Shown: positions 15,001-35,152, counted from the first letter of the stretch. The stretch is DNA of 35,152 bases from Utricularia gibba (GCA_002189035.1 NEEC01000223.1:1-35152), one strand, 5' to 3'. Program-made: numbers and translations. Notes: generated from the letters alone by a model not told the origin.

Positions 15001-18000
15001 CGAAGAAAAAAAATGATGCATTTGTTTAAATTACGATATCACGTGCACCCTACATGATTTTTTCGACAACTTACTTTATACATGGGGAGGCGGTCTTGGG
15101 GGTACCTGGAACCGGAAAATGGTCAGCTTAGGCTTGGCCGATAGTAAGTTGTAGCCCGGCAAAGAAAGTGATGTATTTATTATCGTTCGGTTTTCGGGGC
15201 TTCCTACATGGTTTTTCAAGGAACATCTTCTCGTTTTGTGGCGGCTAGTCTCGCTGGGAACTTTGTCCTGGACCCCGATTCTGTATGGCTCATGGGGTCA
15301 ACCGGATGCAAATCGATGAAAAAAATGATGCATTTGTTTAAATTACGATATCACGTGCACCCTACATGATTTTTTCAACAACTTACTTTATACATGGGAG
15401 GCGGTCTTGGGGGTACCTGGAACCGGAAAAGGTCAGCTTAGGCTTGGGCCGAGTAAGTTGTAGCCCGGCAAAGAAAGTGATGTATTTATTATCGTTCGGT
15501 TTTGGGGGCTGCCTATGGTTTTTCAAGGAAAATCTTCTCGTTTTGTGGGGCCAGTCTCGCTGGGAACTTGGTCCTTGACCCCGATTCTGTATGGCTCATG
15601 GGGTCAACCGGATGCAAATCGATGAAAAAAAATGATGCATTTGTTTAAATTACGATGTCACGTGCACCCCATGATTTTTTAAACAACATACTTTATACAT
15701 GAGGAGGCGTCTTGGGGGTACCTGGAACCGGAAAAGGTCAGCTTAGGCTTGGGCCGAAGTAAGTTGTAGCCCGGCAAAGAAAGTGATGTATTTATTATCG
15801 TTCGGTTTTGGGGCTGCCTACATGGTTTTTCAAGGAACGCTTCTCGTTTTGTGGCGGCCAGTCTCGCTGGGAACTTGGTCCTGGACCCCGATTCTGTATG
15901 GCTCATGGGGTCACCGGATGCAAATCGAAGAAAAAAAATGATGCATTTGTTTAAATTACGATATCACGTGCACCCTACATGATTTTTTCACAACTTACTT
16001 TATACATGGGGAGGCGTCTTGGGGTACCTGGAACCGGAAAATGGTCAGCTTAGGCTTGGGCCGATAGTAAGTTGTAGCCCGGCAAAGAAAGTGATGTATT
16101 TATTATCGTTCGGTTTTGGGGGCTGCCTACATGGTTTTTCAAGGAAATCTTCTCGTTTGTGGCGGCTAGTCTCGCAGGGAACTTGTCCTGGACCCCGATT
16201 CTGTATGGCTCATGGGGTCAACCGGATGCAAATCGAAGAAACAATGATGCATTTGTTTAATTACGATATCACGTGCACCCCACATGATTTTTTCGACAAC
16301 TTACTTTATACATGGGGAGGCGGTCTTGGGGGTACCTGGAACCGGAAAATGGTCAGCTTAGGCTTGGGCCGATAGTAAGTTGTAGCCCGGCAAAGAAAGT
16401 GATGTATTTATTAACGTTCGGTTTTCGGGGTTGCCTACATGGTTTTTCAAGGAACATCTTCCCGTTTTGTGGTGGCTAGTCTCGCTGGGAACTTTGTCCT
16501 GGACCTCGATTCTTTATGGCTTATGAGGTCAACCGGATGCAAATCGATGAAAAAATGATGCATTTGTTTAAATTACGATATCACGTGCACCCTACATGAT
16601 TTTTTCAACAACTTACTTTATACTTGAGGAGGTGGTCTTGGGGGCAAGAGGAACCAGACAACGGTCATATTAGGCTTGGCCGAAAGTAAGTTGTAGCCCG
16701 GCAAAGAAAGTGATGTATTTATTAACGTTCGGTTTTCAGGGTTGCCTACATGGTTTTCCAAGGAAAAGCTTTCGTTTTGTGGCGGCCGCTCTCGCAGGGC
16801 ACTTGGTCCGGCCCCTGATTCTTTATGGCTCATGAGGACAAAAGGATGCAAATCGATGAAAATAATGATGCATTTGTTTAAATTACGATGTCGCGTGCAC
16901 CCCAAATGATTTTTTTAACAACATACTTTATACATGAGGAGGCGGTCTTGGGGGCACTTGGAACCGGAAAAAGATCAGCTTAGGCTTGGGCCGAAAGTAA
17001 GTTGTAGCCCGGCAAAGAAAGTGATGTATTTATTATCGTTCGGTTTTGGGGTTGCCTACATGGTTTTTCAAGGAACATCTTCTCGTTTTGTGGTGGCGTC
17101 TCGCTGGGAACTTGTCCTGACCCCGATTCTGTATGGCTCATGGGGTCAAGGATGCAAATCGAAGAAAAAAAATGATGCATTTGTTAAATTACGATATCAC
17201 GTGCACCCTACATGATTTTTTCGACAACTTACTTTATACATGGGAGGCGGTCTTGGGGGTACCTGGAACCGGAAAATGGTCAGCGTAGGCTTGGGCCGAT
17301 AGTAAGTTGTAGCCGGCAAAAAGTAATGTATTTATTATCGTTCGGTTTTCGGAAGCTGCCTAAATGCTTTTTGAAAGAACATCTTCTCGTTTTATGGCGG
17401 CCAGTCTCGCTGGGAACTTGGTCCTTGACCCTGGTTCTGTATGGCTCATGGGGTCAACCGGATGCAAATCGATGAAAAAAATGATGCATTTGTTTAAATT
17501 ACGATATCACGTGCACCCCACATGATTTTTTAACAACTACTTTATACATGAGGAGGCGGTCTTGGGGTACTGGAACCGGAAAATGGTCAGCGTAGGCTTG
17601 GCCGATAGTAAGTTGTAGCCCGACAAATAAAGTAATGTATTTATTATCGTTCGGTTTTCGGTGCCTAAATGCTTTTTGAAAGAACATCTTCGTTTTATGG
17701 CGGCGTCTCGCTGGAACTTGGTCCTTGACCCTGGTTCTGTATGGCCCATGGGGTCAACCGGATGCAAATCGATGAAAAAAAATGATGCATTTGTTTAAAT
17801 TGCGATATCACGTGCACCCCACATGATTTTTTCAACAACTTACTTTATACTTGAGGAGGCGATCTTAGGGTGCACCTCGAACAGGACAAAGGTAGGTTTG
17901 GCTTGCGCCGAGAGTTAGTTGTAGCCCGACAAAAAGTGATGTATTTATTATCGTTCGGTTTCGGGGCTGCCTACATGTTTTTCAAGGAACCGCTTCTCGT

Positions 18001-20860
18001 TTTGTGGTGGCCAGTCTCGCTGGGAACTTGGTCCTTGACCCCGATTCTGTATGCTCATGAGGTCAACCGGATGCAAATCATTAAAAAAATGATGCATTTG
18101 TTTAAATTACGATGTCACGTGCACCCCACATGATTTTTTTAACAACATACTTTATACATGAGGAGGCGTCTTGGGTGCATTTGGAACGGGACAAAGGTAA
18201 GGTTTTGCTGCACCGAGAGTTAGTTGTAGCCGGCAAATAAAGTGATGTATTTATTATCGTTCGGTTTTCGGGTTGCCTACATGGTTTTCCAAGGAACATC
18301 TTCTCGTTTTGTGGCGCCAGTCTCGCTGGGAGCTTTGTCCTGGACCCCGATTCTGTATGGCTCATGGGGTCAAAAGGATGCAAATCGATGAATACAATGA
18401 TGCATTTGTTTAAATTACGATATCACGTGCACCCTACATGATTTTTTCGACAACTTACTTTATACATGGGGAGGCGGTCTTGGGGGGTACCTGGAACCGG
18501 AAAATGGTCAGCTTAGGCTTGGGCCGATAGTAAGTTGTAGCCCGGCAAAGAAAGTGATGTATTTATTATCGTTCGGTTTTTGGGGGCTGCCTACATGGTT
18601 TTTCAAGGAAATCTTCTCGTTTTGTGGTGGCCAGTCTCGCTGGGAACTTGTCCTGACCCCGATTCTGTATGGCTCATGGGGTCAACCGGATGCAAATCGA
18701 AGAAAAAAAATGATGCATTTGTTTAAATTACGATATCACGTGCACCCTACATGATTTTTTCAACATACTTTATACATGGGAGGCGGTCTTGGGGGCACCT
18801 GGAACGGAAAGGTCAGCTAGGCTTGGGCCGATAGTAAGTTGTAGCCCGACAAATAAAGTGATGTATTTATTATCGTTCGGTTTTCGGGCTGCCTAAATGG
18901 TTTTTCAAAGAACATCTTCTCGTTTTGGCGGCCAGTCTCGCTGGGAACTTGGTCCTTGACCCTGATTCTGTATGGCTCATGGGTCAACCGGATGCAAATC
19001 GATGAAAAAAAATGATGCATTTGTTTAAATTGCGATATCACGTGCACCCCACATGATTTTTTCAACAACTTACTTTATACTTGAGGAGGCGGTCTTGGGG
19101 TGCACCTCGAACAGGACAAAGGTAAGGTTTGGCTTGCCGAGAGTAGTTGTAGCCCGACAAATAAAGTGATGTATTTATTATCGTTCGGTTTTCGGGGGCT
19201 TGCCTACATGGTTTTTCAAGGAACCTTCTCGTTTTGTGGTGGCCAGTCTCGCTGGGAACTTGGTCCTTGACCCCGATTCTGTATGCTCATGAGGTCAACC
19301 GGATGCAAATCAATTAAAAAAAATGATGCATTTGTTTAAATTACGATGTCACGTGCACCCCACATGATTTTTTAACAACATACTTTATACATGAGGAGGC
19401 GTCTTGGGTTTTGGAACGGGAAAAGGTAAGGTTTTGGCCCGAGAGTTAGTTGTAGCCGGCAAATAAAGTGATGTATTTATTATCGTTCGGTTTTCGGGGT
19501 TGCCTACATGGTTTTCCAAGGAACATCTTCTCGTTTGTGGCAGCCAGTCTCGCTGGGAGCTTTGTCCTGGACCCCGATTCTGTATGGCTCATGGGGTCAA
19601 AAGGATGCAAATCGATGAATACAATGATGCATTTGTTTAAATTACGATATCACGTGCACCCTACATGATTTTTTTTCGACAACTTACTTTATACATGGGG
19701 AGGCGGTCTTGGGGGTACCTGGAACCGGAAAATGGTCAGCTTAGGCTTGGGCCGATAGTAAGTTGTAGCCCGGCAAAGAAAGTGATGTATTTATTATCGT
19801 TCGGTTTTCGGGGCTGCCTACATGGTTTTTCAAGGAAATCTTCTCGTTTTGTGGTGGCTAGTCTCGCTGGGAACTTGTCCTGGACCCCGATTCTGTTATG
19901 GCTCATGGGGTCAACCGGATGCAAATCGAAGAAAAAAGATGCATTTGTTTAAATTACGATATCACGTGCACCCTTCATGATTTTTTCACAACATACTTTA
20001 TACATGAGGAGGCGTCTTGGGGACCTGGAACGGAGGTCAGGTAGGCTTGGGCCGAAGTAAGTTGTAGCCCGGCAAAGAAAGTGATGTATTTATTATCGTT
20101 CGGTTTTCGGGGCCTAATGGTTTTTGTCTTCTCGTTTTTGGCGGCCGCTCTCGCTGGGCACTTGGTCCGGGCCCCTGATTCTTTATGGCTCATGAGGACA
20201 AAATGATGCAAATCGATGAAAATAATGATGCATTTGTTTAAATTACGATGTCGCGTGCACCCCAAATGATTTTTTAACAACATACTTTATACATGAGGAG
20301 GCGGTCTTGGGGGCACTTGGAACCGGAAAAAGATCAGCTTAGGCTTGGGCCGAAAGTAAGTTGTAGCCCGGCAAAGAAAGTGATGTATTTATTATCGTTC
20401 GGTTTTTGGGGTTGCCTACATGGTTTTTCAAGGAACATCTTCTCGTTTTGTGGTGGCTAGTTTCGCTGGGAACTTGGTCCTTGACCCCGATTCTGTATGG
20501 CTCATGGGGTCAACCGGATGCAAATCGAAGAAAAAAAATGATGCATTTGTTTAAATTACGATATCACGTGCACCCTACATGATTTTTTCGACAACTTACT
20601 TTATACATGGGGAGGCGGTCTTGGGGGTACCTGGAACCGGAAAATGGTCAGCTTAGGCTTGGGCCGATAGTAAGTTGTAGCCCGGCAAAGAAAGATGTAT
20701 TTATTATCGTTCGGTTTTTGGGGCTGCCTAAATGTTTTTGAAAATCTTCTCGTTTTATGGCGGCCAGTCTCGCTGGGAACTTGTCCTTGACCCCGTTCTG
20801 TATGGCTCATGGGGTGATGAAAAAAAATGATGCATTTGTTTAAATTACGGTATCACGTGC
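1..20860. repeat. Tandem satellite array, ~310-315 bp monomer, ~67 copies (centromeric/pericentromeric-type)
   Basis: The anchor GATGCATTTG recurs at 96, 404, 717, 1027, 1339, 1651, 1963, 2272, 2583, 2896 and onward (spacing 308-313 bp) up to 20829. Conserved blocks such as GTGATGTATTTATTA(T/A)CGTTCGGTTTT and TCACGTGCACC occur in essentially every unit. A centromeric location is an inference only. Confidence 0.98.
140..12860. repeat. Higher-order repeat domain built on an ordered B-C-D-E monomer core with variable A-type fill
   Basis: Variant B (CAAGAGGAACCAGACAACGGTCATATTAGG) occurs near 180, 1430, 3300, 5770, 7620, 9165, 10725 and 11665. It is usually followed by C (CACTTGGAACCGGAAAAAGATC), D (GGTCAGCGTAGG...CTAAATGCTTTTTGAAAG) and E (GCGATCTTAGGGTGCACCTCGAACAGG). 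Confidence 0.85.
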
Positions 20861-21595
20861 CCTGGTTATATTCATATTGTGCATTTTGGTGAGGAGAGCA
20901 GATTCACCATAAGTTTTCTCAACTTCATTACCATCTCTTAGTTCCAATCTCTTTTCTGTAGATTGCAACTCAATCATGATCTCTCTAAATGTTGGCTCTG
21001 GTGTAACAGGATATTCAGGATACAGCTGATGGAGCTTTCCTTCAATAATGTCAAGGATTTTTCTTTCTGTCTCAAGTGCACATAACTTTGGCTCGAATCT
21101 TGCAGGTAGGCTCATGATTGCCTTGCTAATCACCTTTTGATCCTCAAGTTTTTCCCCCAATCCTCGAATCTCCTTCACAAGCTTCGCAGTACGTTCATAA
21201 TAGACTTGTATGGTTTCATTGTCTAACATTTTGTTCCTCTCAAAGTCCTCCAGCTTGTTTTTGCATAATATCTCTCTGAGTTTGGCATCGCCTTCATAAT
21301 GGGATTTGAGAGTATCCCATATTTCTTTTGCTGATTGACACTCTGCAATATCATCAAATAGATGTTCAGAGATGGCTTGATACAAGGCATCCATTGCTTC
21401 ATCTTTTCTCTGTTGAAGATACTCAGCTTCCTCTTGCTGTTCTGATGTGGATTTGCTTGTTATTGTAATAGCCGGAATCTCCCTTTCAACAACATCCCAA
21501 ATCTTTCTGACCCGAAGGTAGCTGCGCATCTTTTTGACCCAGCTTCCATACTCTGAACCATCAAATATTGGAGGTCCTCTACCAGATGCCATCAT
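20840..21595 (-). CDS. gag: Copia-type Gag (capsid region), C-terminally truncated and fused to 6 satellite-encoded residues; 251 aa from the first ATG
   Basis: PPIFDGSEYGSWVKKMRSYL...IWDVVE matches the copia gag N-terminal motif (DUF4219-like). SAKEIWDTLKSHYEG...KM.DNETI..YY.R...LV.EIR.LGE...SLP.RFE matches the Retrotran_gag_2/UBN2-like region. These were recognised by eye, not by HMM. The ORF track starts at a GTG (21601), while the first ATG is at 21595 and an in-frame TAG lies at 21635-21637. There is no CX2CX4HX4C knuckle. The stop TAA at 20840-20842 lies in satellite DNA. Confidence 0.88.
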   Translation of the reverse strand: MMASGRGPPIFDGSEYGSWVKKMRSYLRVRKIWDVVEREIPAITITSKSTSEQQEEAEYLQQRKDEAMDALYQAISEHLFDDIAECQSAKEIWDTLKSHYEGDAKLREILCKNKLEDFERNKMLDNETIQVYYERTAKLVKEIRGLGEKLEDQKVISKAIMSLPARFEPKLCALETERKILDIIEGKLHQLYPEYPVTPEPTFREIMIELQSTEKRLELRDGNEVEKTYGESALLTKMHNMNITRARDTVI

Positions 21596-21623
21596 AGCCA
21601 CCGCTTGACAAGCTTTGGGTTGA

Positions 21624-21644
21624 TACTTGGTAATCTACCAAGTA
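21624..21644 (-). other. Perfect 9-bp stem / 3-nt loop hairpin in the retroelement leader (also 28460-28480, 31597-31617, 34737-34757)
   Basis: TACTTGGTA-ATC-TACCAAGTA, lying between the PBS and the gag ATG. Confidence 0.7.
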
Positions 21645-21701
21645 AAAAACGCTGAACGGTATATAAAATACTGAAACGAACACAGGTTTGAGAACCTTAC
21701 T

Positions 21702-21713
21702 GCTCTGATACCA
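21702..21713 (-). promoter_or_regulatory. Primer-binding site complementary to tRNA-iMet 3' end (copy 1)
   Basis: Plus strand GCTCTGATACCA = minus strand TGGTATCAGAGC, directly after the LTR-terminal CA. This is the canonical plant LTR-retrotransposon Met PBS. Confidence 0.95.
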
Positions 21714-22038
21714 TGTTGTTGCAAGAAAAATAGAGTCTTGGGAAGTAACAAAAAGGTAATGCTTATGAGATCACCTTGGATGAAAAACGACTCATGAACA
21801 ATAAGAATGACCGAAAACCTAATTGACATGCATTTCTAGTAGGGCTTATATATACCAAATACCTAGGTTACCCAACAGTGGGCCACAATCATTGAAAACA
21901 CACAAAAAGCCCAACAACTCGAATCCAACACTTCCATGCTCGAACCCAACACCTTTTTTTATCTGAAATATGACATTATGACACAAGTTTAGTTCTTCCA
22001 ATCACCTTCAAGCTTTGGATTGAGGCTGATCTCCAACA
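21714..22038 (-). repeat. LTR, 325 bp (copy 1)
   Basis: Begins TGTTGGAGATC and ends GCAACAACA on the minus strand (5-bp terminal inverted repeat TGTTG/CAACA). Abuts the PBS and contains a TATA motif. Confidence 0.92.
21846..21854 (-). promoter_or_regulatory. Putative LTR TATA box (copy 1; also at 28682-28690, 31819-31827, 34959-34967)
   Basis: Minus strand GGTATATATAAGCCC, about 185 bp into the LTR, in the sense orientation of gag. Position is plausible for the U3/R boundary. Function is untested. Confidence 0.65.
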
Positions 22039-25000
22039 CTTGGTCCGAGCCCCTGATTCTTTATGGCTCATGAGGACAAAAGGATGCAAATCGATGAATA
22101 CAATGATGCAATTGTTTAAATTACGATATCACGTGCACCCTACATGATTTTTTCAACAACTTACTTTATACTTGAGGAGGTGGTCTTGGGGGGCAAGAGG
22201 AACCGGACAAAGGTCAGCTTATGCTTGGGTCGAAAGTAAGTTGTAGCCTGACAAAGAAAGTGATCTATTTATTAACGTTCGGTTTTCGGGGCTACCTACA
22301 TGGTTTTTCAAGGAACCGCTTCTCGTTTTGTGGCGGCCAGTCTCGCTGGGAACTTGGTCCTTTACCCCGATTCTGTATGGCTCATGAGGTCAACCGAATG
22401 CAAATCGATTAAAAAAAATGATGCATTTGTTTAAATTGCGATATGACGTGCACCCACATGATTTTTTTCAACAACTTACTTTATACTTGGGGAGGCGGTC
22501 TTGGGTGCACCTGGAACGGGACAAAGGTCAGCTTAGGCTTGGGCAGAAGTAAGTTGTAGCCCGCAAATAAAGTGATAAATTTGATATCGTTCGGTTTTCG
22601 GGCTACCTACATGGTTTTTAAGGAACCGCTTCTCGTTTTGTGGCGGCCAGTCTCGCTGGGAACTTGGTCTTTGACCCCGATTCTGTATGGCTCATGAGGT
22701 CAACCGGATGCAAATCGATTAAAAAAAATGATGCATTTGTTTAAATTGCGGTATGACGTGCACCCACATGATTTTTTTCAACAACTTACTTTATACTTGA
22801 GGAGGCGGTCTTGGGGTGCACCTGGAACGGGACAAAGGTCAGCTTAGGCTTGGGCAGAAAGTAAGTTGTAGCCCGGCAAAGAAAGTGATGTATTTATTAT
22901 CGTTCGGTTTTTGGGGGCTGCCTACATGGTTTTTCAAGGAACCGCTTCTCGTTTTGTGGTGGCCAGTCTCGCTGGGAACTTGTCCTGGACCCCGATTCTG
23001 TATGGCTCATGGGTCAACCGGATGCAAATCGAAGAAAAAAAATGATGCATTTGTTTAAATTACGATATCACGTGCACCCACATGATTTTTTCGACAACTT
23101 ACTTTATACATGGGAGGCGGTCTTGGGGTGCACCTGGAACGGGACAAAGGTAGCTTAGGCTTGGCAGAAAGTAAGTTGTAGCCCGGCAAAGAAAGTGATG
23201 TATTTATTATCGTTCGGTTTTTGGGGGCTGCCTACATGGTTTTTCAAGGAAAATCTTCTCGTTTTGTGGTGGCTAGTCTCGCTGGGAACTTGTCCTGGAC
23301 CCCGATTCTGTATGGCTCATGGGTCAACCGGATGCAAATCGAAGAAAAAAATGATGCATTTGTTTAAATTACGATATCACGTGCACCCTACATGATTTTT
23401 TCGACAACTTACTTTATACATGGGGAGGCGGTCTTGGGGGTACCTGGAACGGAAAATGGTCAGCGTAGGCTTGGGCCGATAGTAAGTTGTAGCCCGACAA
23501 ATAAAAGTAATGTATTTATTATCGTTCGGTTTTCGGGCTGCCTAAATGCTTTTTGAAAGAACATCTTCTCGTTTTATGGCGGCCAGTCTCGCTGGGAACT
23601 TGGTCCTTGACCTGATTCTGTATGGCTCATGGGGTCAACCGGATGCAAATCGATGAAAAAAAATGATGCATTTGTTTAAATTGCGATATCACGTGCACCC
23701 CACATGATTTTTTCAACAACTTACTTTATACTTGAGGAGGCGATCTTGGGTGCAGAACGGACAAAGGTAAGGTTTGGCTTGCGCCGAAAGTTAGTTGTAG
23801 CCCGACAAATAAAGTGATGTATTTATTATCGTTCGGTTTTCGGGGGCTGCCTACATGGTTTTTCAAGGAACCGCTTCTCGTTTTGTGGTGGCCAGTCTCG
23901 CTGGGAACTTGGTCCTTGACCCCGATTCTATATGCTCATGAGGTCAACCGGATGCAAATCAATTAAAAAAAATGATGCATTTGTTTAAATTACGATGTCA
24001 CGTGCACCCACATGATTTTTTTAACAACATACTTTATACATGAGGAGGCAGTCTTTGGGTGCATTTGGAACGGGAAAGGTAAGTTTTGCGTGCACCGAGA
24101 GTTAGTTGTAGTCCGGCAAATAAAGTGATGTATTTATTATCGTTCGGTTTTCGGGGTTGCCTACATGGTTTTTCAAGGAACATCTTCTCGTTTTGTGGCA
24201 GCCAGTCTCGCTGGGAGCTTTGTCCTGGACCCCGATTCTGTATGGCTCATGGGGTCAAAAGGATGCAAATCGATGAATACAATGATGCATTTGTTTAAAT
24301 TACGATATCACGTGCACCCTACATGATTTTTTCGACAACTTACTTTATACATGGGGAGGCGGTCTTGGGGGGTACCTGGAACCGGAAAGGTCAGCTTAGG
24401 CTTGGGCCGATAGTAAGTTGTAGCCCGGCAAAAAAGGGATGTATTTATTATCGTTCGGTTTTTGGGGCTGCCTACATGGTTTTTCACGGAAATCTTCTCG
24501 TTTTGTGGTGGCTAGTCTCGCAGGGAACCTTGTCCTCGACCCCGATTCTGTATGGCTCATGGGTCAACCGGATGCAAATCGAAGAAAAAAAATGATGCAT
24601 TTGTTTAAATTATCACGTGTACATGATTTTTTCGACAACTTTATACATGGGGAGGCGGTCTTGGGGGGTACCTGGAACTGGAAAATGGTCAGCGTAGGCT
24701 TGGGCCGATAGTAAGTTGTAGCTAAGTAATGTATTTATTATCGTTCGGTTTTCGGAAGCTGCCTAAATGCTTTTTGAAAGAACATCTTCTCGTTTTATGG
24801 CGGCCAGTCTCGCTGGGAACTTGGTCCTTGACCCTGGTTCTGTATGGCTCAGGGGTCCGGATGCAAATCGATGAAAAAAAATGATGCATTTGTTTAAATT
24901 GCGATATCACGTGCACCCCACATGATTTTTTCAACAACTTACTTTATACTTGAGGAGGCGATCTTAGGGTGCACCTCGAACAGGACAAAGGTAAGGTTTG

Positions 25001-27700
25001 GCTTGCGCCGAGAGTTAGTTGTAGCCCGACAAATAAAGTGATGTATTTATTATCGTTCGGTTTTCGGGGGCTGCCTACATGGTTTTTCAAGGAACCGCTT
25101 CTCGTTTTGTGGTGGCCAGTCTCGCTGGGAACTTGGTCCTTGACCCCGATTCTGTATTGCTCATGAGGTCAACCGGATGCAAATCAATTAAAAAAAATGA
25201 TGCATTTGTTTAAATTACGATGTCACGTGCACCCCACATGATTTTTTAAACAACATACTTTATACATGAGGAGGCAGTCTTTGAGTGCATTTGGAACGGG
25301 ACAAAGGTAAGGTTTTGCGTGCACCGAAAGTAAGTTGTAGCCCGGCAAAGAAAGTGATGTATTTATTAACGTTCGGTTTTCAGGGTTGCCTACATGGTTT
25401 TCCAAGGAAAGCTTTTCGTTTTGTGGCGGCCGCTCTCGCTGGGACTTGGTCCGGGCCCGATTCTTTATGGCTCATGAGGAAAAATGATGCAAATCGATGA
25501 AAATAATGATGCATTTGTTTAAATTACGATGTCGCGTGCACCCCAAATGATTTTTTTAACAACTACTTTATACTGAGGAGGCGGTCTTGGGGGGCACTTG
25601 GAACCGGAAAAATCAGCTTAGGCTTGGGCCGAAAGTAAGTTGTAGCCCGGCAAAGAAAGTGATGTATTTATTATCGTTCGGTTTTTGGGGTTGCCTACAT
25701 GGTTTTTCAAGGAACATCTTCTCGTTTTGTGGTGGCTAGTCTCGCTGGGAACTTGGTCCTTGACCCGATTCTGTATGGCTCATGGGGTCAACCGGATGCA
25801 AATCGAAGAAAAAAAATGATGCATTTGTTTAAATTACGATATCACGTGCACCCTTTTTCACAACTTACTTTATACATGGGGAGGCGGTCTTGGGGTACCT
25901 GGAACCGGAAGGTCAGCTTAGGCTTGGGCCGATAGTAAGTTGTAGCCCGGCAAAGAAAGTGATGTATTTATTATCGTTCGGTTTTTGGGGGCTGCCTACA
26001 TGGTTTTTCAAGGAAAATCTTCTCGTTTTGTGGTGGCTAGTCTCGCAGGGAACTTGTCCTCGACCCGATTCTGTATGGCTCATGGGGTCAACCGGATGCA
26101 AATCGAAGAAAAAAAATGATGCATTTGTTTAAATTACGATATCACGTGCACCCTACATGATTTTTTTCGACAACTTACTTTATACATGGGGAGGCGGTCT
26201 TGGGGGGTACCTGGAACTGGAAAATGGTCAGCGTAGGCTTGGGCCGATAGTAAGTTGTAGCCCGACAAATAAAGTAATGTATTTATTATCGTTCGGTTTT
26301 CGGAAGCTGCCTAAATGCTTTTTGAAAGAACATCTTCTCGTTTATGGCGGCCAGTCTCGCTGGGAACTTGGTCCTTGACCCTGGTTCTGTATGGCTCATG
26401 GGGTCAACCGGATGCAAATCGATGAAAAAAAATGATGCATTTGTTTAAATTGCGATATCACGTGCACCCACATGATTTTTTCAACAACTTACTTTATACT
26501 TGAGGAGGCGATCTTAGGGTGCACCTCGAACAGGACAAAGGTAAGGTTTGGCTTGCGCCGAGAGTTAGTTGTAGCCCGACAAATAAAGTGATGTATTTAT
26601 TATCGTTCGGTTTTCGGGGCTGCCTACATGGTTTTTCAAGGAACCGCTTCTCGTTTTGTGGTGGCCAGTCTCGCTGGGAACTTGGTCCTTGACCCCGATT
26701 CTGTATTGCTCATGAGGTCAACCGGATGCAAATCAATTAAAAAAATGATGCATTTGTTTAAATTACGATGTCACGTGCACCCCACATGATTTTTTTAACA
26801 ACATACTTTATACATGAGGAGGCAGTCTTTGAGTGCATTTGGAACGGGACAAAGGTAAGGTTTTGCGTGCACCGAAGTAAGTTGTAGCCCGGCAAAGAAA
26901 GTGATGTATTTATTAACGTTCGGTTTTCAGGGTTGCCTACATGGTTTTCCAAGGAAAAGCTTTTCGTTTTGTGGCGGCCGCTCTCGCTGGGCACTTGGTC
27001 CGGGCCCCTGATTCTTTATGGCTCATGAGGACAAAATGATGCAAATCGATGAAAATAATGATGCATTTGTTTAAATTACGATGTCGCGTGCACCCCAAAT
27101 GATTTTTTTAACAACATACTTTATACATGAGGAGGCGGTCTTGGGGGGCACTTGGAACCGGAAAAATCAGCTTAGGCTTGGGCCGAAAGTAAGTTGTAGC
27201 CCGGCAAAGAAAGTGATGTATTTATTATCGTTCGGTTTTGGGGTTGCCTACATGGTTTTTCAAGGAACATCTTCTCGTTTTGTGGTGGCTAGTTTCGCTG
27301 GGAACTTGGTCCTTGACCCCGATTCTGTATGGCTCATGGGGTCAACCGGATGCAAATCGAAGAAAAAAAATGATGCATTTGTTTAAATTACGATATCACG
27401 TGCACCCTACATGATTTTTTCGACAACTTACTTTATACATGGGGAGGCGGTCTTGGGGGGTACCTGGAACCGGAAAATGGTCAGCTTAGGCTTGGGCCGA
27501 TAGTAAGTTGTAGCCCGGCAAAGAAAGTGATGTATTTATTATCGTTCGGTTTTTGGGGCTGCCTAAATGTTTTTGAAGGAACATCTTCTCGTTTTATGGC
27601 GGCCAGTCTCGCTGGGAACTTGGTCCTTGACCCCGTTCTGTATGGCTCATGGGGTGATGAAAAAAAATGATGCATTTGTTTAAATTACGGTATCACGTGC
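22039..27700. repeat. Same ~312 bp satellite, ~18 monomers between retroelement copies 1 and 2
   Basis: Resumes directly after the LTR end (CCAACA|CTTGGTCCGAGCCCCTG) with the same monomer motifs and orientation. Confidence 0.97.
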
Positions 27701-28431
27701 CCTGGTTATATTCATATTGTGCATTTTGGTGAGGAGAGCAGATTCACCATAAGTTTTCTCAACTTCATTACCATCTCTTAGTTCCAATCTCTTTTCTGTA
27801 GATTGCAACTCAATCATGATCTCTCTAAATGTTGCTCTGGTGTAACAGGATATTCAGGATACAGCTGATGGAGCTTTCCTTCAATAATGTCAAGGATTTT
27901 TCTTTCTGTCTCAAGTGCACATAACTTTGCTCGAATCTTGCAGGTAGGCTCATGATTGCCTGCTAATCACCTTTTGATCCTCAAGTTTTTCCCCCAATCC
28001 TCGAATCTCCTTCACAAGCTTCGCAGTACGTTCATAATAGACTTGTATGGTTTCATTGTCTAACATTTTGTTCCTCTCAAAGTCCTCCAGCTTGTTTTTG
28101 CATAATATCTCTCTGAGTTTGGCATCGCCTTCATAATGGGATTTGAGAGTATCCCATATTTCTTTTGCTGATTGACACTCTGCAATATCATCAAATAGAT
28201 GTTCAGAGATGGCTTGATACAAGGCATCCATTGCTTCATCTTTTCTCTGTTGAAGATACTCAGCTTCCTCTTGCTGTTCTGATGTGGATTTGCTTGTTAT
28301 TGTAATAGCCGGAATCTCCCTTTCAACAACATCCCAAATCTTTCTGACCCGAAGGTAGCTGCGCATCTTTTGACCCAGCTTCCATACTCTGAACCATCAA
28401 ATATTGGAGGTCCTCTACCAGATGCCATCAT
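27680..28431 (-). pseudogene. gag: gag copy 2, four 1-bp deletions (possibly sequencing errors)
   Basis: 752 bp versus 756 bp in copy 1. Losses are GG>G twice (~27835, ~27929), TT>T (~27960) and T5>T4 (~28370). The ORF fragment 27950-28366 matches the copy 1 protein. Confidence 0.75.
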
Positions 28432-28537
28432 AGCCACCGCTTGACAAGCTTTGGGTTGATACTTGGTAATCTACCAAGTAAAAAACGCTGAACGGTATAT
28501 AAAATACTGAAACGAACACAGGTTTGAGAACCTTACT

Positions 28538-28549
28538 GCTCTGATACCA
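28538..28549 (-). promoter_or_regulatory. PBS tRNA-iMet (copy 2)
   Basis: GCTCTGATACCA on the plus strand adjacent to the LTR. Confidence 0.95.
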
Positions 28550-28873
28550 TGTTGTTGCAAGAAAAATAGAGTCTTGGGAAGTAACAAAAAGGTAATGCTT
28601 ATGAGATCACCTTGGATGAAAAACGACTCATGAACAATAAGAATGACCGAAAACCTAATTGACATGCATTTCTAGTAGGGCTTATATATACCAAATACCT
28701 AGGTTACCCAACAGTGGGCCACAATCATTGAAAACACACAAAAAGCCCAACAACTCGAATCCAACACTTCCATGCTCGAACCAACACCTTTTTTTATCTG
28801 AAATATGACATTATGACACAAGTTTAGTTCTTCCAATCACCTTCAAGCTTTGGATTGAGGCTGATCTCCAACA
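28550..28873 (-). repeat. LTR (copy 2), 324 bp
   Basis: Same termini and internal sequence as the copy 1 LTR. Confidence 0.92.
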
Positions 28874-30834
28874 CTTGGTCCGAGCCCCTGATTCTTTATG
28901 GCTCATGAGGACAAAAGGATGCAAATCGATGAATACAATGATGCAATTGTTTAAATTACGATATCACGTGCACCCTACATGATTTTTTCAACAACTTACT
29001 TTATACTTGAGGAGGTGGTCTTGGGGGGCAAGAGGAACCGGACAAAGGTCAGCTTATGCTTGGGTCGAAAGTAAGTTGTAGCCTGACAAAGAAAGTGATC
29101 TATTTATTAACGTTCGGTTTTCGGGGCTACCTACATGGTTTTTCAAGGAACCGCTTCTCGTTTTGTGGCGGCCAGTCTCGCTGGGAACTTGGTCCTTTAC
29201 CCCGATTCTGTATGGCTCATGGGGTCAACCGGATGCAAATCGAAGAAAAAAAATGATGCATTTGTTAAATTACGATATCACGTGCACCCTACATGATTTT
29301 TTCGACAACTTACTTTATACATGGGGAGGCGGTCTTGGGGGTACCTGGAACTGGAAAATGGTCAGCGTAGGCTTGGGCCGATAGTAAGTTGTAGCCCGAC
29401 AAATAAAGTAATGTATTTATTATCGTTCGGTTTTCGGAAGCTGCCTAAATGCTTTTTGAAAGAACATCTTCTCGTTTTATGGCGGCCAGTCTCGCTGGGA
29501 ACTTGGTCCTTGACCCTGGTTCTGTATGGCTCATGGGGTCAACCGGATGCAATCGATGAAAAAAAATGATGCATTTGTTTAAATTGCGATATCACGTGCA
29601 CCCCACATGATTTTTTCAACAACTTACTTTATACTTGAGGAGGCGATCTTAGGGTGACGGGACAAAGGTAAGGTTTGGCTTGCGCCGAGAGTTAGTTGTA
29701 GCCCGACAAATAAAGTGATGTATTTATTATCGTTCGGTTTTCGGGGGCTGCCTACATGGTTTTTCAAGGAACCGCTTCTCGTTTTGTGGTGGCCAGTCTC
29801 GCTGGGAACTTGGTCCTTGACCCCGATTCTGTATGCTCATGAGGTCAACCGGATGCAAATCAATTAAAAAAAATGATGCATTTGTTTAAATTACGATGTC
29901 ACGTGCACCCCACATGATTTTTTTAACAACATACTTTATACATGAGGAGGCAGTCTTTGAGTGCATTTGGAACGGGACAAAGGTAAGGTTTTGCGTGCAC
30001 CGAAAGTAAGTTGTAGCCCGGCAAAGAAAGTGATGTATTTATTAACGTTCGGTTTTCAGGGTTGCCTACATGGTTTTCCAAGGAAAAGCTTTTCGTTTTG
30101 TGGCGGCCGCTCTCGCTGGGCACTTGGTCCGGGCCCCTGATTCTTTATGGCTCATGAGGACAAAATGATGCAAATCGATGAAAATAATGATGCATTTGTT
30201 TAAATTACGATGTCGCGTGCACCCCAAATGATTTTTTTAACAACATACTTTATACATGAGGAGGCGGTCTTGGGGGGCACTTGGAACCGGAAAAAGATCA
30301 GCTTAGGCTTGGGCCGAAAGTAAGTTGTAGCCCGGCAAAGAAAGTGATGTATTTATTATCGTTCGGTTTTTGGGGTTGCCTACATGGTTTTTCAAGGAAC
30401 ATCTTCTCGTTTTGTGGTGGCTAGTTTCGCTGGGAACTTGGTCCTTGACCCCGATTCTGTATGGCTCATGGGGTCAACCGGATGCAAATCGAAGAAAAAA
30501 AATGATGCATTTGTTTAAATTACGATATCACGTGCACCCTACATGATTTTTTCGACAACTTACTTTATACATGGGGAGGCGGTCTTGGGGGTACCTGGAA
30601 CCGGAAAATGGTCAGCTTAGGCTTGGGCCGATAGTAAGTTGTAGCCCGGCAAAGAAAGTGATGTATTTATTATCGTTCGGTTTACGGGGGCTTCCTAAAT
30701 GCTTTTTGAAAGAACATCTTCTCGTTCTATGGCGGCCAGTCTCGCTGGGAACTTGGTCCTTGACCCTGGTTCTGTATGGCTCATGGGGTGATGAAAAAAA
30801 ATGATGCATTTGTTTAAATTACGGTATCACGTGC
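28874..30834. repeat. Same satellite, ~6.3 monomers between retroelement copies 2 and 3
   Basis: Partial monomer plus six monomers in the variant order G-D-E-F/B-C-A(16-bp deletion). Confidence 0.97.
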
Positions 30835-31568
30835 CCTGGTTATATTCATATTGTGCATTTTGGTGAGGAGAGCAGATTCACCATAAGTTTTCTCAACTTC
30901 ATTACCATCTCTTAGTTCCAATCTCTTTTCTGTAGATTGCAACTCAATCATGAACTCTCTAAATGTTGGCTCTGGTGTAACAGGATATTCAGGATACAGC
31001 TGATGGAGCTTTCCTTCAATAATGTCAAGGATTTTTCTTTCTGTCTCAAGTGCACATAACTTTGGCTCGAATCTTGCAGGTAGGCTCATGATTGCCTTGC
31101 TAATCACCTTTTGATCCTCAAGTTTTTCCCCCAATCCTCGAATCCCTTCACAAGCTTCGCAGTACGTTCATAATAGACTTGTATGGTTTCATTGTCTAAC
31201 ATTTTGTTCCTCTCAAAGTCCTCCAGCTTGTTTTTGCATAATATCTCTCTGAGTTTGGCATCGCCTTCATAATGGGATTTGAGAGTATCCCATATTTCTT
31301 TTGCTGATTGACACTCTGCAATATCATCAAATAGATGTTCAGAGATGGCTTGATACAAGGCATCCATTGCTTCATCTTTTCTCTGTTGAAGATACTCAGC
31401 TTCCTCTTGCTGTTCTGATGTGGATTTGCTTGTTATTGTAATAGCCGGAATCTCCCTTTCAACAACATCCCAAATCTTTCTGACCCGAAGGTAGCTGCGC
31501 ATCTTTTTGACCCAGCTTCCATACTCTGAACCATCAAATATTGGAGGTCCTCTACCAGATGCCATCAT
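30814..31568 (-). pseudogene. gag: gag copy 3, single 1-bp deletion frameshift (possibly a sequencing error)
   Basis: 755 bp. AATCTCCTT>AATCCCTT near 31144 splits it into ORFs 31104-31574 and 30814-31134. Confidence 0.75.
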
Positions 31569-31674
31569 AGCCACCGCTTGACAAGCTTTGGGTTGATACT
31601 TGGTAATCTACCAAGTAAAAAACGCTGAACGGTATATAAAATACTGAAACGAACACAGGTTTGAGAACCTTACT

Positions 31675-31686
31675 GCTCTGATACCA
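31675..31686 (-). promoter_or_regulatory. PBS tRNA-iMet (copy 3)
   Basis: GCTCTGATACCA on the plus strand adjacent to the LTR. Confidence 0.95.
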
Positions 31687-32011
31687 TGTTGTTGCAAGAA
31701 AAATAGAGTCTTGGGAAGTAACAAAAAGGTAATGCTTATGAGATCACCTTGGATGAAAAACGACTCATGAACAATAAGAATGACCGAAAACCTAATTGAC
31801 ATGCATTTCTAGTAGGGCTTATATATACCAAATACCTAGGTTACCCAACAGTGGGCCACAATCATTGAAAACACACAAAAAGCCCAACAACTCGAATCCA
31901 ACACTTCCATGCTCGAACCCAACACCTTTTTTTATCTGAAATATGACATTATGACACAAGTTTAGTTCTTCCAATCACCTTCAAGCTTTGGATTGAGGCT
32001 GATCTCCAACA
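31687..32011 (-). repeat. LTR (copy 3), 325 bp
   Basis: Same termini and internal sequence as the copy 1 LTR. Confidence 0.92.
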
Positions 32012-33975
32012 CTTGGTCCGAGCCCCTGATTCTTTATGGCTCATGAGGACAAAAGGATGCAAATCGATGAATACAATGATGCAATTGTTTAAATTACGAT
32101 ATCACGTGCACCCTACATGATTTTTTCAAAACTTACTTTATACTTGAGGAGGTGGTCTTGGGGGGCAAGAGGAACCGGACAAAGGTCAGCTTATGCTTGG
32201 GTCGAAAGTAAGTTGTAGCCTGACAAAGAAAGTGATCTATTTATTAACGTTCGGTTTTCGGGGCTACCTACATGGTTTTTCAAGGAACCGCTTCTCGTTT
32301 TGTGGCGGCCAGTCTCGCTGGGAACTTGGTCCTTTACCCCGATTCTGTATGGCTCATGGGGTCAACCGGATGCAAATCGAAGAAAAAAAATGATGCATTT
32401 GTTTAAATTACGATATCACGTGCACCCTACATGATTTTTTCGACAACTTACTTTATACATGGGGAGGCGGTCTTGGGGGGTACCTGGAACTGGAAAATGG
32501 TCAGCGTAGGCTTGGGCCGATAGTAAGTTGTAGCCCGACAAATAAAGTAATGTATTTATTATCGTTCGGTTTTCGGAAGCTGCCTAAATGCTTTTTGAAA
32601 GAACCTTCTCGTTTTATGGCGGCCAGTCTCGCTGGGAACTTGGTCCTTGACCCTGGTTCTGTATGGCTCATGGGGTCAACCGGATGCAAATCGATGAAAA
32701 AAAATGATGCATTTGTTTAAATTGCGATATCACGTGCACCCCACATGATTTTTTCAACAACTTACTTTATACTTGAGGAGGCGATCTTAGGGTGCACCTC
32801 GAACAGGACAAAGGTAAGGTTTGGCTTGCGCCGAGAGTTAGTTGTAGCCCGACAAATAAAGTGATGTATTTATTATCGTTCGGTTCGGGGGCTGCCTACA
32901 TGGTTTTTCAAGGAACCGCTTCTCGTTTTGTGGTGGCCAGTCTCGCTGGGAACTTGGTCCTTGACCCCGATTCTGTATTGCTCATGAGGTCAACCGGATG
33001 CAAATCAATTAAAAAAAATGATGCATTTGTTTAAATTACGATGTCACGTGCACCCCACATGATTTTTTTAACAACATACTTTATACATGAGGAGGCAGTC
33101 TTTGAGTGCATTTGGAACGGGACAAAGGTAAGGTTTTGCGTGCACCGAAAGTAAGTTGTAGCCCGGCAAAGAAAGTGATGTATTTATTAACGTTCGGTTT
33201 TCAGGGTTGCCTACATGGTTTTCCAAGGAAAAGCTTTTCGTTTTGTGGCGGCCGCTCTCGCTGGGCACTTGGTCCGGCCCCTGATTTCTTTATGGCTCAT
33301 GAGGACAAAATGATGCAAATCGATGAAAATAATGATGCATTTGTTTAAATTACGATGTCGCGTGCACCCAAATGATTTTTTTAACAACATACTTTATACA
33401 TGAGGAGGCGGTCTTGGGGGCACTTGGAACCGGAAAAAGATCAGCTTAGGCTTGGGCCGAAAGTAAGTTGTAGCCCGGCAAAGAAAGTGATGTATTTATT
33501 ATCGTTCGGTTTTTGGGTTGCCTACATGGTTTTTCAAGGAACATCTTCTCGTTTTGTGGTGGCTAGTTTCGCTGGGAACTTGGTCCTTGACCCGATTCTG
33601 TATGGCTCATGGGGTCAACCGGATGCAAATCGAAGAAAAAAAATGATGCATTTGTTTAAATTACGATATCACGTGCACCCTACATGATTTTTTCGACAAC
33701 TTACTTTATACATGGGGAGGCGGTCTTGGGGGTACCTGGAACCGGAAAATGGTCAGCTTAGGCTTGGCCGATAGTAAGTTGTAGCCCGGCAAAGAAAGTG
33801 ATGTATTTATTATCGTTCGGTTTTCGGGGGCTTCCTAAATGCTTTTTGAAAGAACATCTTCTCGTTCTATGGCGGCCAGTCTCGCTGGGAACTTGGTCCT
33901 TGACCCTGGTTCTGTATGGCTCATGGGGTGATGAAAAAAAATGATGCATTTGTTTTAAATTACGGTATCACGTGC
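32012..33975. repeat. Same satellite, ~6.3 monomers between retroelement copies 3 and 4
   Basis: Same variant order and diagnostic SNPs as 28874-30834. Confidence 0.97.
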
Positions 33976-34708
33976 CCTGGTTATATTCATATTGTGCATT
34001 TTGGTGAGGAGAGCAGATTCACCATAAGTTTTCTCAACTTCATTACCATCTCTTAGTTCCAATCTCTTTTCTGTAGATTGCAACTCAATCATGATCTCTC
34101 TAAATGTTGGCTCTGGTGTAACAGGATATTCAGGATACAGCTGATGGAGCTTTCCTTCAATAATGTCAAGGATTTTTCTTTCTGTCTCAAGTGCACATAA
34201 CTTTGGCTCGAATCTTGCAGGTAGGCTCATGATTGCCTTGCTAATCACCTTTTGATCCTCAAGTTTTTCCCCCAATCCTCGAATCTCCTTCACAAGCTTC
34301 GCAGTACGTTCATAATAGACTTGTATGGTTTCATTGTCTAACATTTTGTTCCTCTCAAAGTCCTCCAGCTTGTTTTTGCATAATATCTCTCTGAGTTTGG
34401 CATCGCCTTCATAATGGGATTTGAGAGTATCCCATATTTCTTTGCTGATTGACACTCTGCAATATCATCAAATAGATGTTCAGAGATGGCTTGATACAAG
34501 GCATCCATTGCTTCATCTTTTCTCTGTTGAAGATACTCAGCTTCCTCTTGCTGTTCTGATGTGGATTTGCTTGTTATTGTAATAGCCGGAATCTCCCTTT
34601 CAACAACATCCCAAATCTTTCTGACCCGAAGGTAGCTGCGCATCTTTTGACCCAGCTTCCATACTCTGAACCATCAAATATTGGAGGTCCTCTACCAGAT
34701 GCCATCAT
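33955..34708 (-). pseudogene. gag: gag copy 4, two 1-bp deletions in T runs (possibly sequencing errors)
   Basis: 754 bp. T4>T3 near 34441 and T5>T4 near 34645. ORF pieces are 34338-34643 and 33955-34455. Confidence 0.75.
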
Positions 34709-34814
34709 AGCCACCGCTTGACAAGCTTTGGGTTGATACTTGGTAATCTACCAAGTAAAAAACGCTGAACGGTATATAAAATACTGAAACGAACACAGGT
34801 TTGAGAACCTTACT

Positions 34815-34826
34815 GCTCTGATACCA
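34815..34826 (-). promoter_or_regulatory. PBS tRNA-iMet (copy 4)
   Basis: GCTCTGATACCA on the plus strand adjacent to the LTR. Confidence 0.95.
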
Positions 34827-35143
34827 TGTTGTTGCAAGAAAAATAGAGTCTTGGGAAGTAACAAAAAGGTAATGCTTATGAGATCACCTTGGATGAAAAA
34901 CGACTCATGAACAATAAGAATGACCGAAAACCTAATTGACATGCATTTCTAGTAGGGCTTATATATACCAAATACCTAGGTTACCAACAGTGGGCCACAA
35001 TCATTGAAACACAAAAAGCCCAACAACTCGAATCCAACACTTCCATGCTCGAACCCAACACCTTTTTTATCTGAAATATGACATTATGACAAGTTTAGTT
35101 CTTCAATCACCTTCAAGCTTTGGATTGAGGCTGATCTCCAACA
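34827..35143 (-). repeat. LTR (copy 4), 317 bp
   Basis: Same termini. Shorter through several 1-3 bp deletions in runs and dinucleotides. Confidence 0.9.
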
Positions 35144-35152
35144 CTTGGTCCG

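What the first reader, a model, noticed from the sequence alone, without database searches (positions are those of the whole stretch)
20861..35152. A retrotransposon LTR-PBS-gag module has become part of the satellite repeat unit
Seen: four ~1.18 kb copia fragments with identical left (CACGTGC|CCTGG) and right (CCAACA|CTTGG) junctions, identical flanking private SNPs, and spacings of 6840, 3134 and 3141 bp. Inference: one insertion was truncated and then amplified by the array's own tandem-duplication process, creating a new composite HOR of [LTR-PBS-gag + 6 monomers]. What was kept is the promoter, the priming site, a leader hairpin and a capsid ORF, while all enzymes were lost. This looks like the birth of a hybrid satellite and is the best candidate for a new system in this window.
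Basis: partly seen in the sequence, partly recalled or inferred. Interest (0 to 1): 0.85.

Follow-up and report, generated by a model that had tools for sequence, protein, structure and literature searches.

The report
Retrotransposon stub copied along with satellite
One plant copia retrotransposon landed in a 312-bp satellite array, lost everything past its gag gene, and was then copied four times with its neighbouring satellite monomers by ordinary unequal recombination; this is a clean example of a process already described, not a new system.

Summary
Four 1168-1178 bp inserts (20861-22038, 27701-28873, 30835-32011, 33976-35143) sit in a ~312-bp satellite array. They share both junctions, private flank variants and the stated spacings. 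On the minus strand each insert has a complete 325-bp LTR, a tRNA-iMet-type primer binding site, a leader with a 9-bp hairpin, and the first 245 codons of a Ty1/copia gag (Pfam PF14223, E 2e-27).

The four copies differ by one substitution. All other differences are 1-3-nt length changes, mostly in homopolymer or short-repeat runs, which look like long-read noise.

The history can be reconstructed: one insertion, one truncation, a 6.84-kb tandem duplication with its left boundary inside the satellite (~20139), an in-register exchange between two monomers that removed 12 monomers (giving 3.13 kb), then further copying of the short unit.

[quoted passage not shown] is therefore well supported. 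"New system / birth of a hybrid satellite" is not. Only two full short units and one long unit are visible, nothing shows the retained parts were selected, and the gag frame is open in copy 1 only. The same process is described for Arabidopsis ATHILA, for other centromeric transposons and for human composite repeats. Host and parent element were not found.

The parts
1..20860 (+). Host satellite array upstream of the inserts. Monomers are ~312 bp, in several subtypes arranged as irregular higher-order repeats.
   Evidence: TRF finds period 312 and 109 copies over 1-33929. Monomer subtypes are 97-99.4% identical at lags of 4, 6, 16, 18, 20 and 27 monomers.
20139..20860 (+). Left flank of copy 1 (2 monomers plus an 81-bp partial monomer) that already belongs to the duplicated block. 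The boundary of the 6.84-kb duplication lies at about 20139-20268.
   Evidence: There are 0 substitutions in 701 bp against 26993-27700. Left of ~20139 the mismatch density jumps to 12-15%.
20861..22038 (-). Copy 1 of the truncated Ty1/copia element (1178 bp): LTR-PBS-leader-gag(1-245).
21714..22038 (-). Complete 325-bp 5' LTR of copy 1. It starts TGTTGG and ends CAACA, has a TATA-like TATATATAAG at 21854-21845, and has short TGTTGG(G/A)TTCGAG subrepeats in the upstream part.
   Evidence: Sequence read. The LTR end abuts the PBS, and the LTR start abuts the satellite at GGGAA|CTTGG.
21702..21713 (-). Primer binding site TGGTATCAGAGC, directly after the LTR's terminal CA.
   Evidence: That this 12-mer complements the 3' end of plant initiator tRNA-Met, as in Tnt1 and BARE-1, is from my own knowledge and was not tested here.
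21624..21644 (-). Leader hairpin TACTTGGTA-GAT-TACCAAGTA (9-bp stem, 3-nt loop).
   Evidence: The hairpin is in the MFE and centroid folds, but the 136-nt leader as a whole is not unusually stable (z = -1.78).
20840..21601 (-). The only open gag reading frame (253 aa from a GTG; the ATG is at 21595). Residues up to 20861 come from the element. The last 7 residues and the stop come from the satellite.
   Evidence: Pfam gives Retrotran_gag_2 PF14223 at E 2e-27 (residues 25-185, profile 1-153 of 172) and a DUF4219 match below its cut-off. No CCHC knuckle is present.
22039..27700 (+). Satellite part of unit 1: 18 monomers plus an 82-bp partial monomer.
27701..28873 (-). Copy 2 (1173 bp). LTR 28873-28550, PBS 28549-28538, gag ATG 28431. 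The frame is broken by four 1-nt length differences in the gag part.
28874..30834 (+). Satellite part of unit 2: 6 monomers plus an 83-bp partial monomer. Monomer 1 equals monomer 1 of unit 1, and monomers 2-7 equal monomers 14-19 of unit 1. The exchange zone is about 29201-29221.
30835..32011 (-). Copy 3 (1177 bp). LTR 32011-31687, PBS 31686-31675, gag ATG 31568. It has one 1-nt length difference in gag (near 31145) and the only substitution among the four copies (30954).
32012..33975 (+). Satellite part of unit 3: 6 monomers plus an 84-bp partial monomer.
   Evidence: Against unit 2 it shows 2 substitutions and 16 indel events.
33976..35143 (-). Copy 4 (1168 bp). LTR 35143-34827, PBS 34826-34815, gag ATG 34708. 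It has two 1-nt length differences in gag and several 1-3-nt ones in the LTR. Only 9 bp of right flank lie inside the window.

Best explanation
The inserts are a passenger fragment of a Ty1/copia LTR retrotransposon, carried along by the ordinary recombination turnover of a plant satellite array.

Proposed history:
1. A copia-type element integrated once, antisense to the monomer register used here, between ...GGGAA and CTTGG... of a 312-bp monomer.
2. One deletion removed the element from gag codon 245 onward (the rest of gag, pol and the 3' LTR) together with at least 215 bp of satellite. This left LTR-PBS-leader-gag(1-245) joined to ...CACGTGC.
3. Unequal, in-register exchange between satellite monomers duplicated a 6.84-kb block (722 bp of left flank, the insert and about 16 monomers).
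4. A second in-register exchange, between monomers 2 and 14 of the block, removed exactly 12 monomers and made a 3.13-kb unit.
5. That short unit was copied at least once or twice more.

Shown: the shared junctions, the block boundaries, the exchange zone and the near-identity of the copies. Inferred: the order of steps 3-5, and that the mechanism is unequal crossing-over or gene conversion rather than some other route to tandem duplication.

The LTR, primer binding site, hairpin and gag are present because they are the 5' end of the element next to the surviving junction. There is no evidence that they do anything in their new setting.
For: - Both junction k-mers occur exactly 4 times, and only at the inserts. 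They replace the normal satellite continuation.
- Private flank markers are shared on both sides.
- Among the four inserts there is one substitution in about 4.7 kb. All other differences are 1-3-nt deletions, mostly in homopolymer or short-repeat runs.
- Left flank of copy 1 against left flank of copy 2: 0 substitutions in 701 bp, then an abrupt loss of identity left of ~20139.
- Unit 2 matches unit 1 without a mismatch up to position 348. It matches monomer 14 of unit 1 from position 328 onward, so there was a clean in-register exchange.
- Units 2 and 3 differ by 3 substitutions and 22 indels in 3.1 kb, while monomers within a unit are only 84-90% alike.
- The rest of the array also shows block copies at many lags, so this kind of turnover is the array's normal behaviour.
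- Element identity: Pfam Retrotran_gag_2 at 2e-27. There are 4244 gag relatives, and the named ones are angiosperm copia proteins, including a TNT 1-94-like polyprotein. Two of them (P0015, P0004) have the protease-region domain Pol_BBD before RVT_2, and P0015 also has rve between the two.
- The same process is described in the literature.
Against: - The parent element and the host genome were not found, so the size of the deletion and any microhomology at the left junction cannot be checked.
- No target-site duplication can be tested because the 3' end of the element is gone.
- The window may be a single long read or a lightly polished assembly, since the differences are dominated by indels. 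An assembly error in copy number cannot be excluded from the window alone.
- The order 'long unit first, short unit second' could be reversed.
Confidence: 0.85

Rival explanations
1. A selected hybrid satellite or new functional module. On this view the LTR promoter, primer binding site, hairpin and gag were kept because the unit does something. Examples would be LTR-driven transcription of the satellite, a gag-only protein that interferes with related elements, or a new centromere-competent repeat.
For: The LTR is complete, with a TATA-like box. Copy 1 has an open 253-aa frame covering most of the gag core domain. With no 3' LTR, a transcript started in the LTR would run through gag into the satellite (inference). 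The composite units are the youngest duplications in the window.
Against: Only 4 copies are visible. Three of the four gag frames are broken as read. The copies are too similar for any test of selection. The retained part is exactly what a single deletion from the 3' side would leave. TE-free block copies elsewhere in the array show that the array duplicates blocks whatever their content. No expression or chromatin data are available.
Confidence: 0.06
2. Four independent insertions of a site-specific element into the same position of four monomers.
For: Some retrotransposons do target satellite repeats. All four copies are on the same strand and at the same monomer position.
Against: All four share the same internal truncation point in gag, the same 15-nt deletion and variants in the left flank, and the same divergent right-flank monomer, which occurs nowhere else. 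Identity extends through 2-6.8 kb of surrounding satellite. A fragment with no integrase, no reverse transcriptase and no 3' LTR cannot transpose as such.
Confidence: 0.01
3. An artefact of assembly or of a single noisy read. The true locus would have fewer copies, and the tandem units would come from mis-assembly of a repetitive region or from a read artefact.
For: Differences between units are dominated by 1-nt homopolymer length changes (22 indels against 3 substitutions between units 2 and 3). That pattern is typical of long-read error, so the sequence is not highly polished.
Against: The units are not simple duplicates. Unit 1 has 18 monomers and units 2 and 3 have 6. There is a clean exchange zone, a cluster of 5-6 substitutions shared by units 2 and 3 but not unit 1, an 8-nt indel and a copy-specific substitution. 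These features point to distinct physical copies.
Confidence: 0.06
4. The parent was already a non-autonomous, gag-only LTR element (of the TR-GAG type), so the enzymes were lost before insertion and not at this locus.
For: Only gag is seen. Gag-only LTR elements exist in plants (my own knowledge, not tested here).
Against: The gag frame runs straight into the satellite with no stop, polypurine tract or 3' LTR. So a truncation happened here in any case. The closest relatives with names are full polyproteins.
Confidence: 0.1

Closest known systems
Post-integration duplication of centromeric transposons inside satellite arrays. Examples: Arabidopsis ATHILA in CEN180 (bioRxiv 10.1101/2021.05.30.446350); a Gypsy element in Anoplius nigerrimus, LINEs in Porphyrio hochstetteri and retroviruses in Cervus elaphus (bioRxiv 10.64898/2026.09.17.752431, section 9).
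   Same: One integration was then copied by host recombination. The copies lie on the same strand with identical flanks, inside a satellite array, and the process is attributed to the same one that makes higher-order repeats.
   Different: Here the passenger is a Ty1/copia fragment truncated in gag, not an intact element or a solo LTR. The copies are strictly tandem at 3.1-6.8 kb, not up to hundreds of kb apart. Whether this array is centromeric is unknown.
Composite repeats / macrosatellites of the human T2T genome (bioRxiv 10.1101/2021.07.12.451456).
   Same: The repeating unit is built from TE pieces plus satellite or other repeats, is arrayed in tandem, and is thought to expand by unequal crossing over.
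   Different: Those arrays have many units and are old enough to compare across primates. Here only 2-3 units are seen and they are practically identical.
Retrotransposon-derived tandem repeats: maize CRM1TR/CRM4TR (PMC3648361), Rosa canina Athila-derived arrays and Linaria vulgaris transposon-mosaic interruptions (10.64898/2026.09.17.752431).
   Same: The LTR and leader region of an LTR retrotransposon becomes part of a tandem unit after deletions and recombination.
   Different: CRM1TR/CRM4TR and the Rosa arrays are built entirely from element sequence. Here about 62% of the short unit is the pre-existing host satellite, and the element is copia, not gypsy.
Ty1/copia LTR retrotransposons of plants (Tnt1 / TNT 1-94-like).
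   Same: Copia-type gag domain, a short LTR with TG...CA ends, and a tRNA-iMet-type primer binding site directly after the LTR.
   Different: There is no pol, polypurine tract or 3' LTR. The nearest protein in 1.8 billion representatives is only 42% identical, so the family itself is not represented in the libraries searched.

Membership tests
Ty1/copia LTR retrotransposon (fragment of) | gag of the copia type (Pfam Retrotran_gag_2 / UBN2 family) | tested here: met
   PF14223 at E 2e-27, 96 bits against a cut-off of 27. DUF4219 scores 23 bits, below its cut-off of 27.
Ty1/copia LTR retrotransposon (fragment of) | LTR with TG...CA termini, followed directly by a PBS complementary to initiator tRNA-Met | tested here: met
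   The 325-bp LTR starts TGTTGG and ends CAACA, and TGGTATCAGAGC follows with no gap. Complementarity to tRNA-iMet rests on my own knowledge; no tRNA was aligned.
Ty1/copia LTR retrotransposon (fragment of) | pol with integrase upstream of reverse transcriptase | not testable with these tools
   pol is absent from all four copies. The relative P0015 has rve at 367-467 before RVT_2 at 607-842.
Ty1/copia LTR retrotransposon (fragment of) | Two LTRs and a 5-bp target-site duplication | tested here: not met
   There is only one LTR per copy, and no second LTR fragment anywhere in the window. The element is truncated, so it counts as a fragment and not an intact member.
Higher-order repeat of a satellite | Multi-monomer units much more alike between units than monomers are within a unit | tested here: met
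   Units 2 and 3 differ by 3 substitutions and 22 indels in 3.1 kb. Monomers within a unit are 84-90% identical. Only two full short units and one long variant are visible.
Post-integration TE duplication in a satellite array | Copies share identical junctions or flanks and strand, so there was one integration event | tested here: met
Post-integration TE duplication in a satellite array | The array is the functional centromere (CENH3-bound) | not testable with these tools
   No chromatin data, and the host is unknown.
Composite repeat / macrosatellite (definition of bioRxiv 10.1101/2021.07.12.451456) | [quoted passage not shown] | tested here: inconclusive
   The unit is a TE fragment plus 6.3 monomers of one satellite, in tandem. 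There are only two component types and 2-3 units, and the extent beyond the window is unknown.
TE-derived satellite (CRM1TR type) | The monomer is derived entirely from the element | tested here: not met
   1.96 kb of each 3.13-kb unit is the pre-existing 312-bp satellite.

The most novel reading that the evidence does not exclude
The 3.1-kb [LTR-PBS-leader-gag stub + 6 monomers] unit is the seed of a new macrosatellite that extends well beyond the window. Its intact LTR promoter would drive gag-satellite read-through transcripts, or a gag-only protein that interferes with related copia elements in the way truncated Gag does in yeast Ty1 copy-number control. The TE stub would then change the transcription or chromatin state of the array.
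Probability: 0.06. Interest if true: 0.6.

Novelty: new member of a known kind. Interest (0 to 1): 0.3.

Why it matters
This is a tidy case in which each step from transposon insertion to composite tandem unit can be read at base-pair level: the junctions, the duplication boundary and the in-register exchange zone. The insert also serves as a unique marker for how fast, and in what block sizes, this satellite array turns over. In substitutions, the youngest events in the window are essentially undiverged. The case does not reveal a new mechanism or system. If the unit proved abundant genome-wide or transcribed from the LTR, it would be a useful example of a TE changing the character of a satellite.

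Tried and rejected
1. Finding the parent element or the host. None of these searches found it:
- A word-indexed protein search with the gag gave no hit.
- The exhaustive HMMER search gave 4244 relatives, but the best was only 42% identical (Zingiber, Camellia, Theobroma, Melia).
- Exact-protein look-ups of the open frame found nothing.
- Satellite and LTR/PBS k-mers had no match in the viral, metagenome or prokaryote genome collections.
- Protein-guided locus searches in the metagenome and genome collections found nothing.
- Satellite and PBS k-mers were not found in the paper library.

2. Satellite identity. A literature search for a 312-bp plant satellite turned up Hssat1 of Humulus scandens (PMC10614002), a centromeric repeat of about 312 bp. 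Its consensus is published only as an image, so the only match is in monomer length. I treat it as an unverified lead, not an identification.

3. Other ideas tested and dropped:
- That the 312-bp monomer is an old dimer of ~156 bp: rejected, since the half-against-half alignment score is no better than shuffled sequence.
- Rfam families in 20000-35152: none.
- Pfam on the recurrent 60-100-aa frames of the satellite: none.
- The 64-aa frame inside the LTR/leader: no family.
- The leader fold as a whole is not significantly stable (z = -1.78), so I make no functional claim for the hairpin.

The copies were only compared with each other.
Full report
**What the window is.** The whole 35,152-bp window is one tandem array of a ~312-bp satellite. 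TRF reports period 312 and 109 copies over 1-33929, with 80% matches and 6% indels. GC is about 0.445 and GC skew is strongly positive, about +0.15. Four ~1-kb stretches interrupt this pattern: there GC drops to about 0.40 and the skew turns negative.

**Check of the observation.**
- The left junction 12-mer CACGTGCCCTGG occurs at 20854, 27694, 30828 and 33969. The right junction 11-mer CCAACACTTGG occurs at 22033, 28868, 32006 and 35138. Neither occurs elsewhere.
- The inserts are therefore 20861-22038 (1178 bp), 27701-28873 (1173), 30835-32011 (1177) and 33976-35143 (1168). The spacings are 6840, 3134 and 3141 bp, as stated.
- In the array, CACGTGC is normally followed by ACC (79 of 83 sites), and CTTGGTCC is normally preceded by TGGGAA. 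Only the four insert sites differ.
- A 15-nt deletion and the variant TACGGTATC occur only in the four left flanks. Two diagnostic strings occur only in the three right flanks that lie inside the window.
- The monomer to the right of each insert is 99.7-100% identical between units, but at most 90.5% identical to any other monomer.
- One real difference splits the left flanks into copies 1+2 against copies 3+4: CCCC-G against CCCTGG.

**What the insert is.** The element reads on the minus strand. Coordinates are for copy 1.
- LTR: 325 bp, 22038-21714. It starts TGTTGG and ends CAACA, and has a TATA-like TATATATAAG at 21854-21845.
- Primer binding site: TGGTATCAGAGC at 21713-21702, directly after the LTR. 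From my own knowledge this is the sequence plant copia elements use to prime from initiator tRNA-Met.
- Leader: 106 nt, containing a perfect 9-bp hairpin at 21644-21624. The leader as a whole is not unusually stable (z = -1.78).
- gag: the ATG is at 21595 and the reading frame runs to the left junction.

The 245 element-encoded residues match Pfam Retrotran_gag_2, "gag-polypeptide of LTR copia-type", at E 2e-27 over profile positions 1-153 of 172. There is also a DUF4219 match below its cut-off. An exhaustive search of 1.84 billion representative proteins gave 4244 relatives. The named ones are angiosperm copia proteins, including a "Pol polyprotein from transposon TNT 1-94" of Melia azedarach.

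In those relatives the protease-region domain (Pol_BBD) begins at residues ~283-324. In the Melia polyprotein (P0015), integrase (rve) comes before reverse transcriptase. So the fragment stops in the C-terminal linker of gag. It has no CCHC knuckle, protease, integrase, reverse transcriptase, polypurine tract or 3' LTR, and there is no second LTR piece anywhere in the window.

In copy 1 the frame is 253 aa (20840-21601), and its last 7 residues and stop come from the satellite. The other frames are broken by 1-nt length differences: four in copy 2, one in copy 3 and two in copy 4.

**How alike the copies are, and the quality of the sequence.**
- Across the four inserts there is a single substitution, at 30954 in copy 3. 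All other differences are 1-3-nt deletions, mostly in homopolymer or short-repeat runs.
- Units 2 and 3 (3134 and 3141 bp) differ by 3 substitutions and 22 indels. Most of the indels are 1-nt length changes in short homopolymer runs, and one is 8 nt long.
- This indel-dominated pattern is what long-read error looks like. The window is probably a read or a lightly polished assembly, and the frame breaks in copies 2-4 may not be real.
- In substitutions the units are at least 99.5% identical. Monomers within a unit are only 84-90% alike.

**Reconstructing the history.**
- The insert does not sit in a continuous monomer. The left flank ends at register position 97 and the right flank restarts at position 1, so at least 215 bp of satellite went missing along with the 3' part of the element. 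The right junction is the true integration junction, because the LTR's terminal TG/CA abuts GGGAA|CTTGG. The left junction is a deletion scar.
- The left flank of copy 1 matches the left flank of copy 2 with 0 substitutions over 701 bp (20160-20860 against 26993-27700). Left of ~20139 the mismatch density jumps to 12-15%. This marks the edge of a 6.84-kb tandem duplication, and that edge lies in satellite, not in the element.
- Unit 2 equals unit 1 without a mismatch through monomer 1 and the first 34 bp of monomer 2. It equals monomer 14 of unit 1 from 14 bp into the monomer onward. There was therefore a clean in-register exchange in a ~20-bp zone (window ~29201-29221) that removed exactly 12 monomers.
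- Units 2 and 3 share a cluster of 5-6 substitutions near 27553-27634 that unit 1 lacks. This places the 3.1-kb duplication after the split from unit 1.
- The rest of the array shows the same kind of block copying without any transposon. Monomer subtypes are 97-99.4% identical at lags of 4, 6, 16, 18, 20 and 27 monomers.

So the array's ordinary unequal exchange or gene conversion copied the insert as a passenger.

**Rival readings.**
- Independent site-specific insertions: excluded by the shared internal truncation point and the shared private flanks.
- Assembly or read artefact: cannot be excluded from one window. It is made unlikely by the different unit lengths, the exchange zone, the shared substitution cluster, the 8-nt indel and the copy-specific substitution.
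- A gag-only (TR-GAG-like) parent: possible, but a truncation occurred here in any case, because the frame runs straight into satellite.
- A selected function for the retained module: there is no evidence. What was kept is simply the 5' end next to the surviving junction, three of the four frames are broken as read, and the copies are too young for a selection test.

**Comparison with what is known.**
- A 2026 atlas of 325 genomes describes Gypsy, LINE and retroviral copies with identical target-site duplications or flanks inside satellite arrays of a wasp, a bird and a deer. [quoted passage not shown] It also describes tandem transposon-mosaic interruptions in Linaria and Misopates (10.64898/2026.09.17.752431, section 9).
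- The human T2T repeat paper defines composite repeats, which combine TEs with satellites and other repeats in tandem arrays and are attributed to unequal crossing over (10.1101/2021.07.12.451456).
- Maize CRM1TR and CRM4TR show LTR+UTR regions becoming tandem repeats (PMC3648361).

The present case belongs to this family of events. What is particular here is that the passenger is a copia stub cut in gag, the strict tandem arrangement at 3.1-6.8 kb, and the base-pair resolution of each step.

**What could not be done.** Neither the host species nor the parent element could be found in any collection available. The only lead on the satellite is a match in monomer length with the ~312-bp centromeric Hssat1 of Humulus scandens. 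Copy number beyond the window, transcription, CENH3 occupancy and methylation cannot be addressed here.

**Verdict.** This is a new member of a known kind, of modest interest.

Noticed in passing
window 1-35152, seen best between 27701-30834 and 30835-33975: Differences between near-identical copies are almost all 1-nt length changes, mostly in short homopolymer runs (22 indels against 3 substitutions between units 2 and 3). This suggests the window is a long read or a lightly polished assembly. Frameshifts and monomer 'indel divergence' should be read with that in mind.
   Followed up: partly
window 1-20860: The satellite has several monomer subtypes arranged in an irregular higher-order pattern, with a frequent period of 4 monomers. 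There are block copies at lags of 16, 18, 20 and 27 monomers that are 97-99.4% identical, so the array duplicates multi-monomer blocks without any transposon involved.
   Followed up: partly
window 22039-22352, 28874-29187, 32012-32324: The monomer directly to the right of every insert is a strongly divergent variant, at most 90.5% identical to all ~90 other monomers. This resembles reports that satellites next to centromeric transposons are more diverged. It could also be an old variant that happened to be the target.
   Followed up: no
window 27553-27634, against 30687-30768 and 33827-33909: A cluster of 5-6 substitutions within ~80 bp separates the last monomers of unit 1 from those of units 2 and 3, while the inserts next to them show none. 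This looks like a short gene-conversion tract from another monomer.
   Followed up: no
window 21930-21960 (minus strand, upstream part of the LTR): There are three short direct subrepeats of the form TGTTGG(G/A)TTCGAG, which echo the LTR's own 5' terminus TGTTGG.
   Followed up: no
whole array, + strand (e.g. 27081-27386, 33400-33687): Because the monomer length is close to 3 x 104, recurrent 60-100-aa open frames run along the + strand of the satellite. They have no Pfam match and are most likely meaningless.
   Followed up: yes
whole array: The monomer length (~312 bp) matches the published length of Hssat1, the centromeric satellite of Humulus scandens (PMC10614002). The sequence could not be compared, so this is only a lead to the host.
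   Followed up: partly
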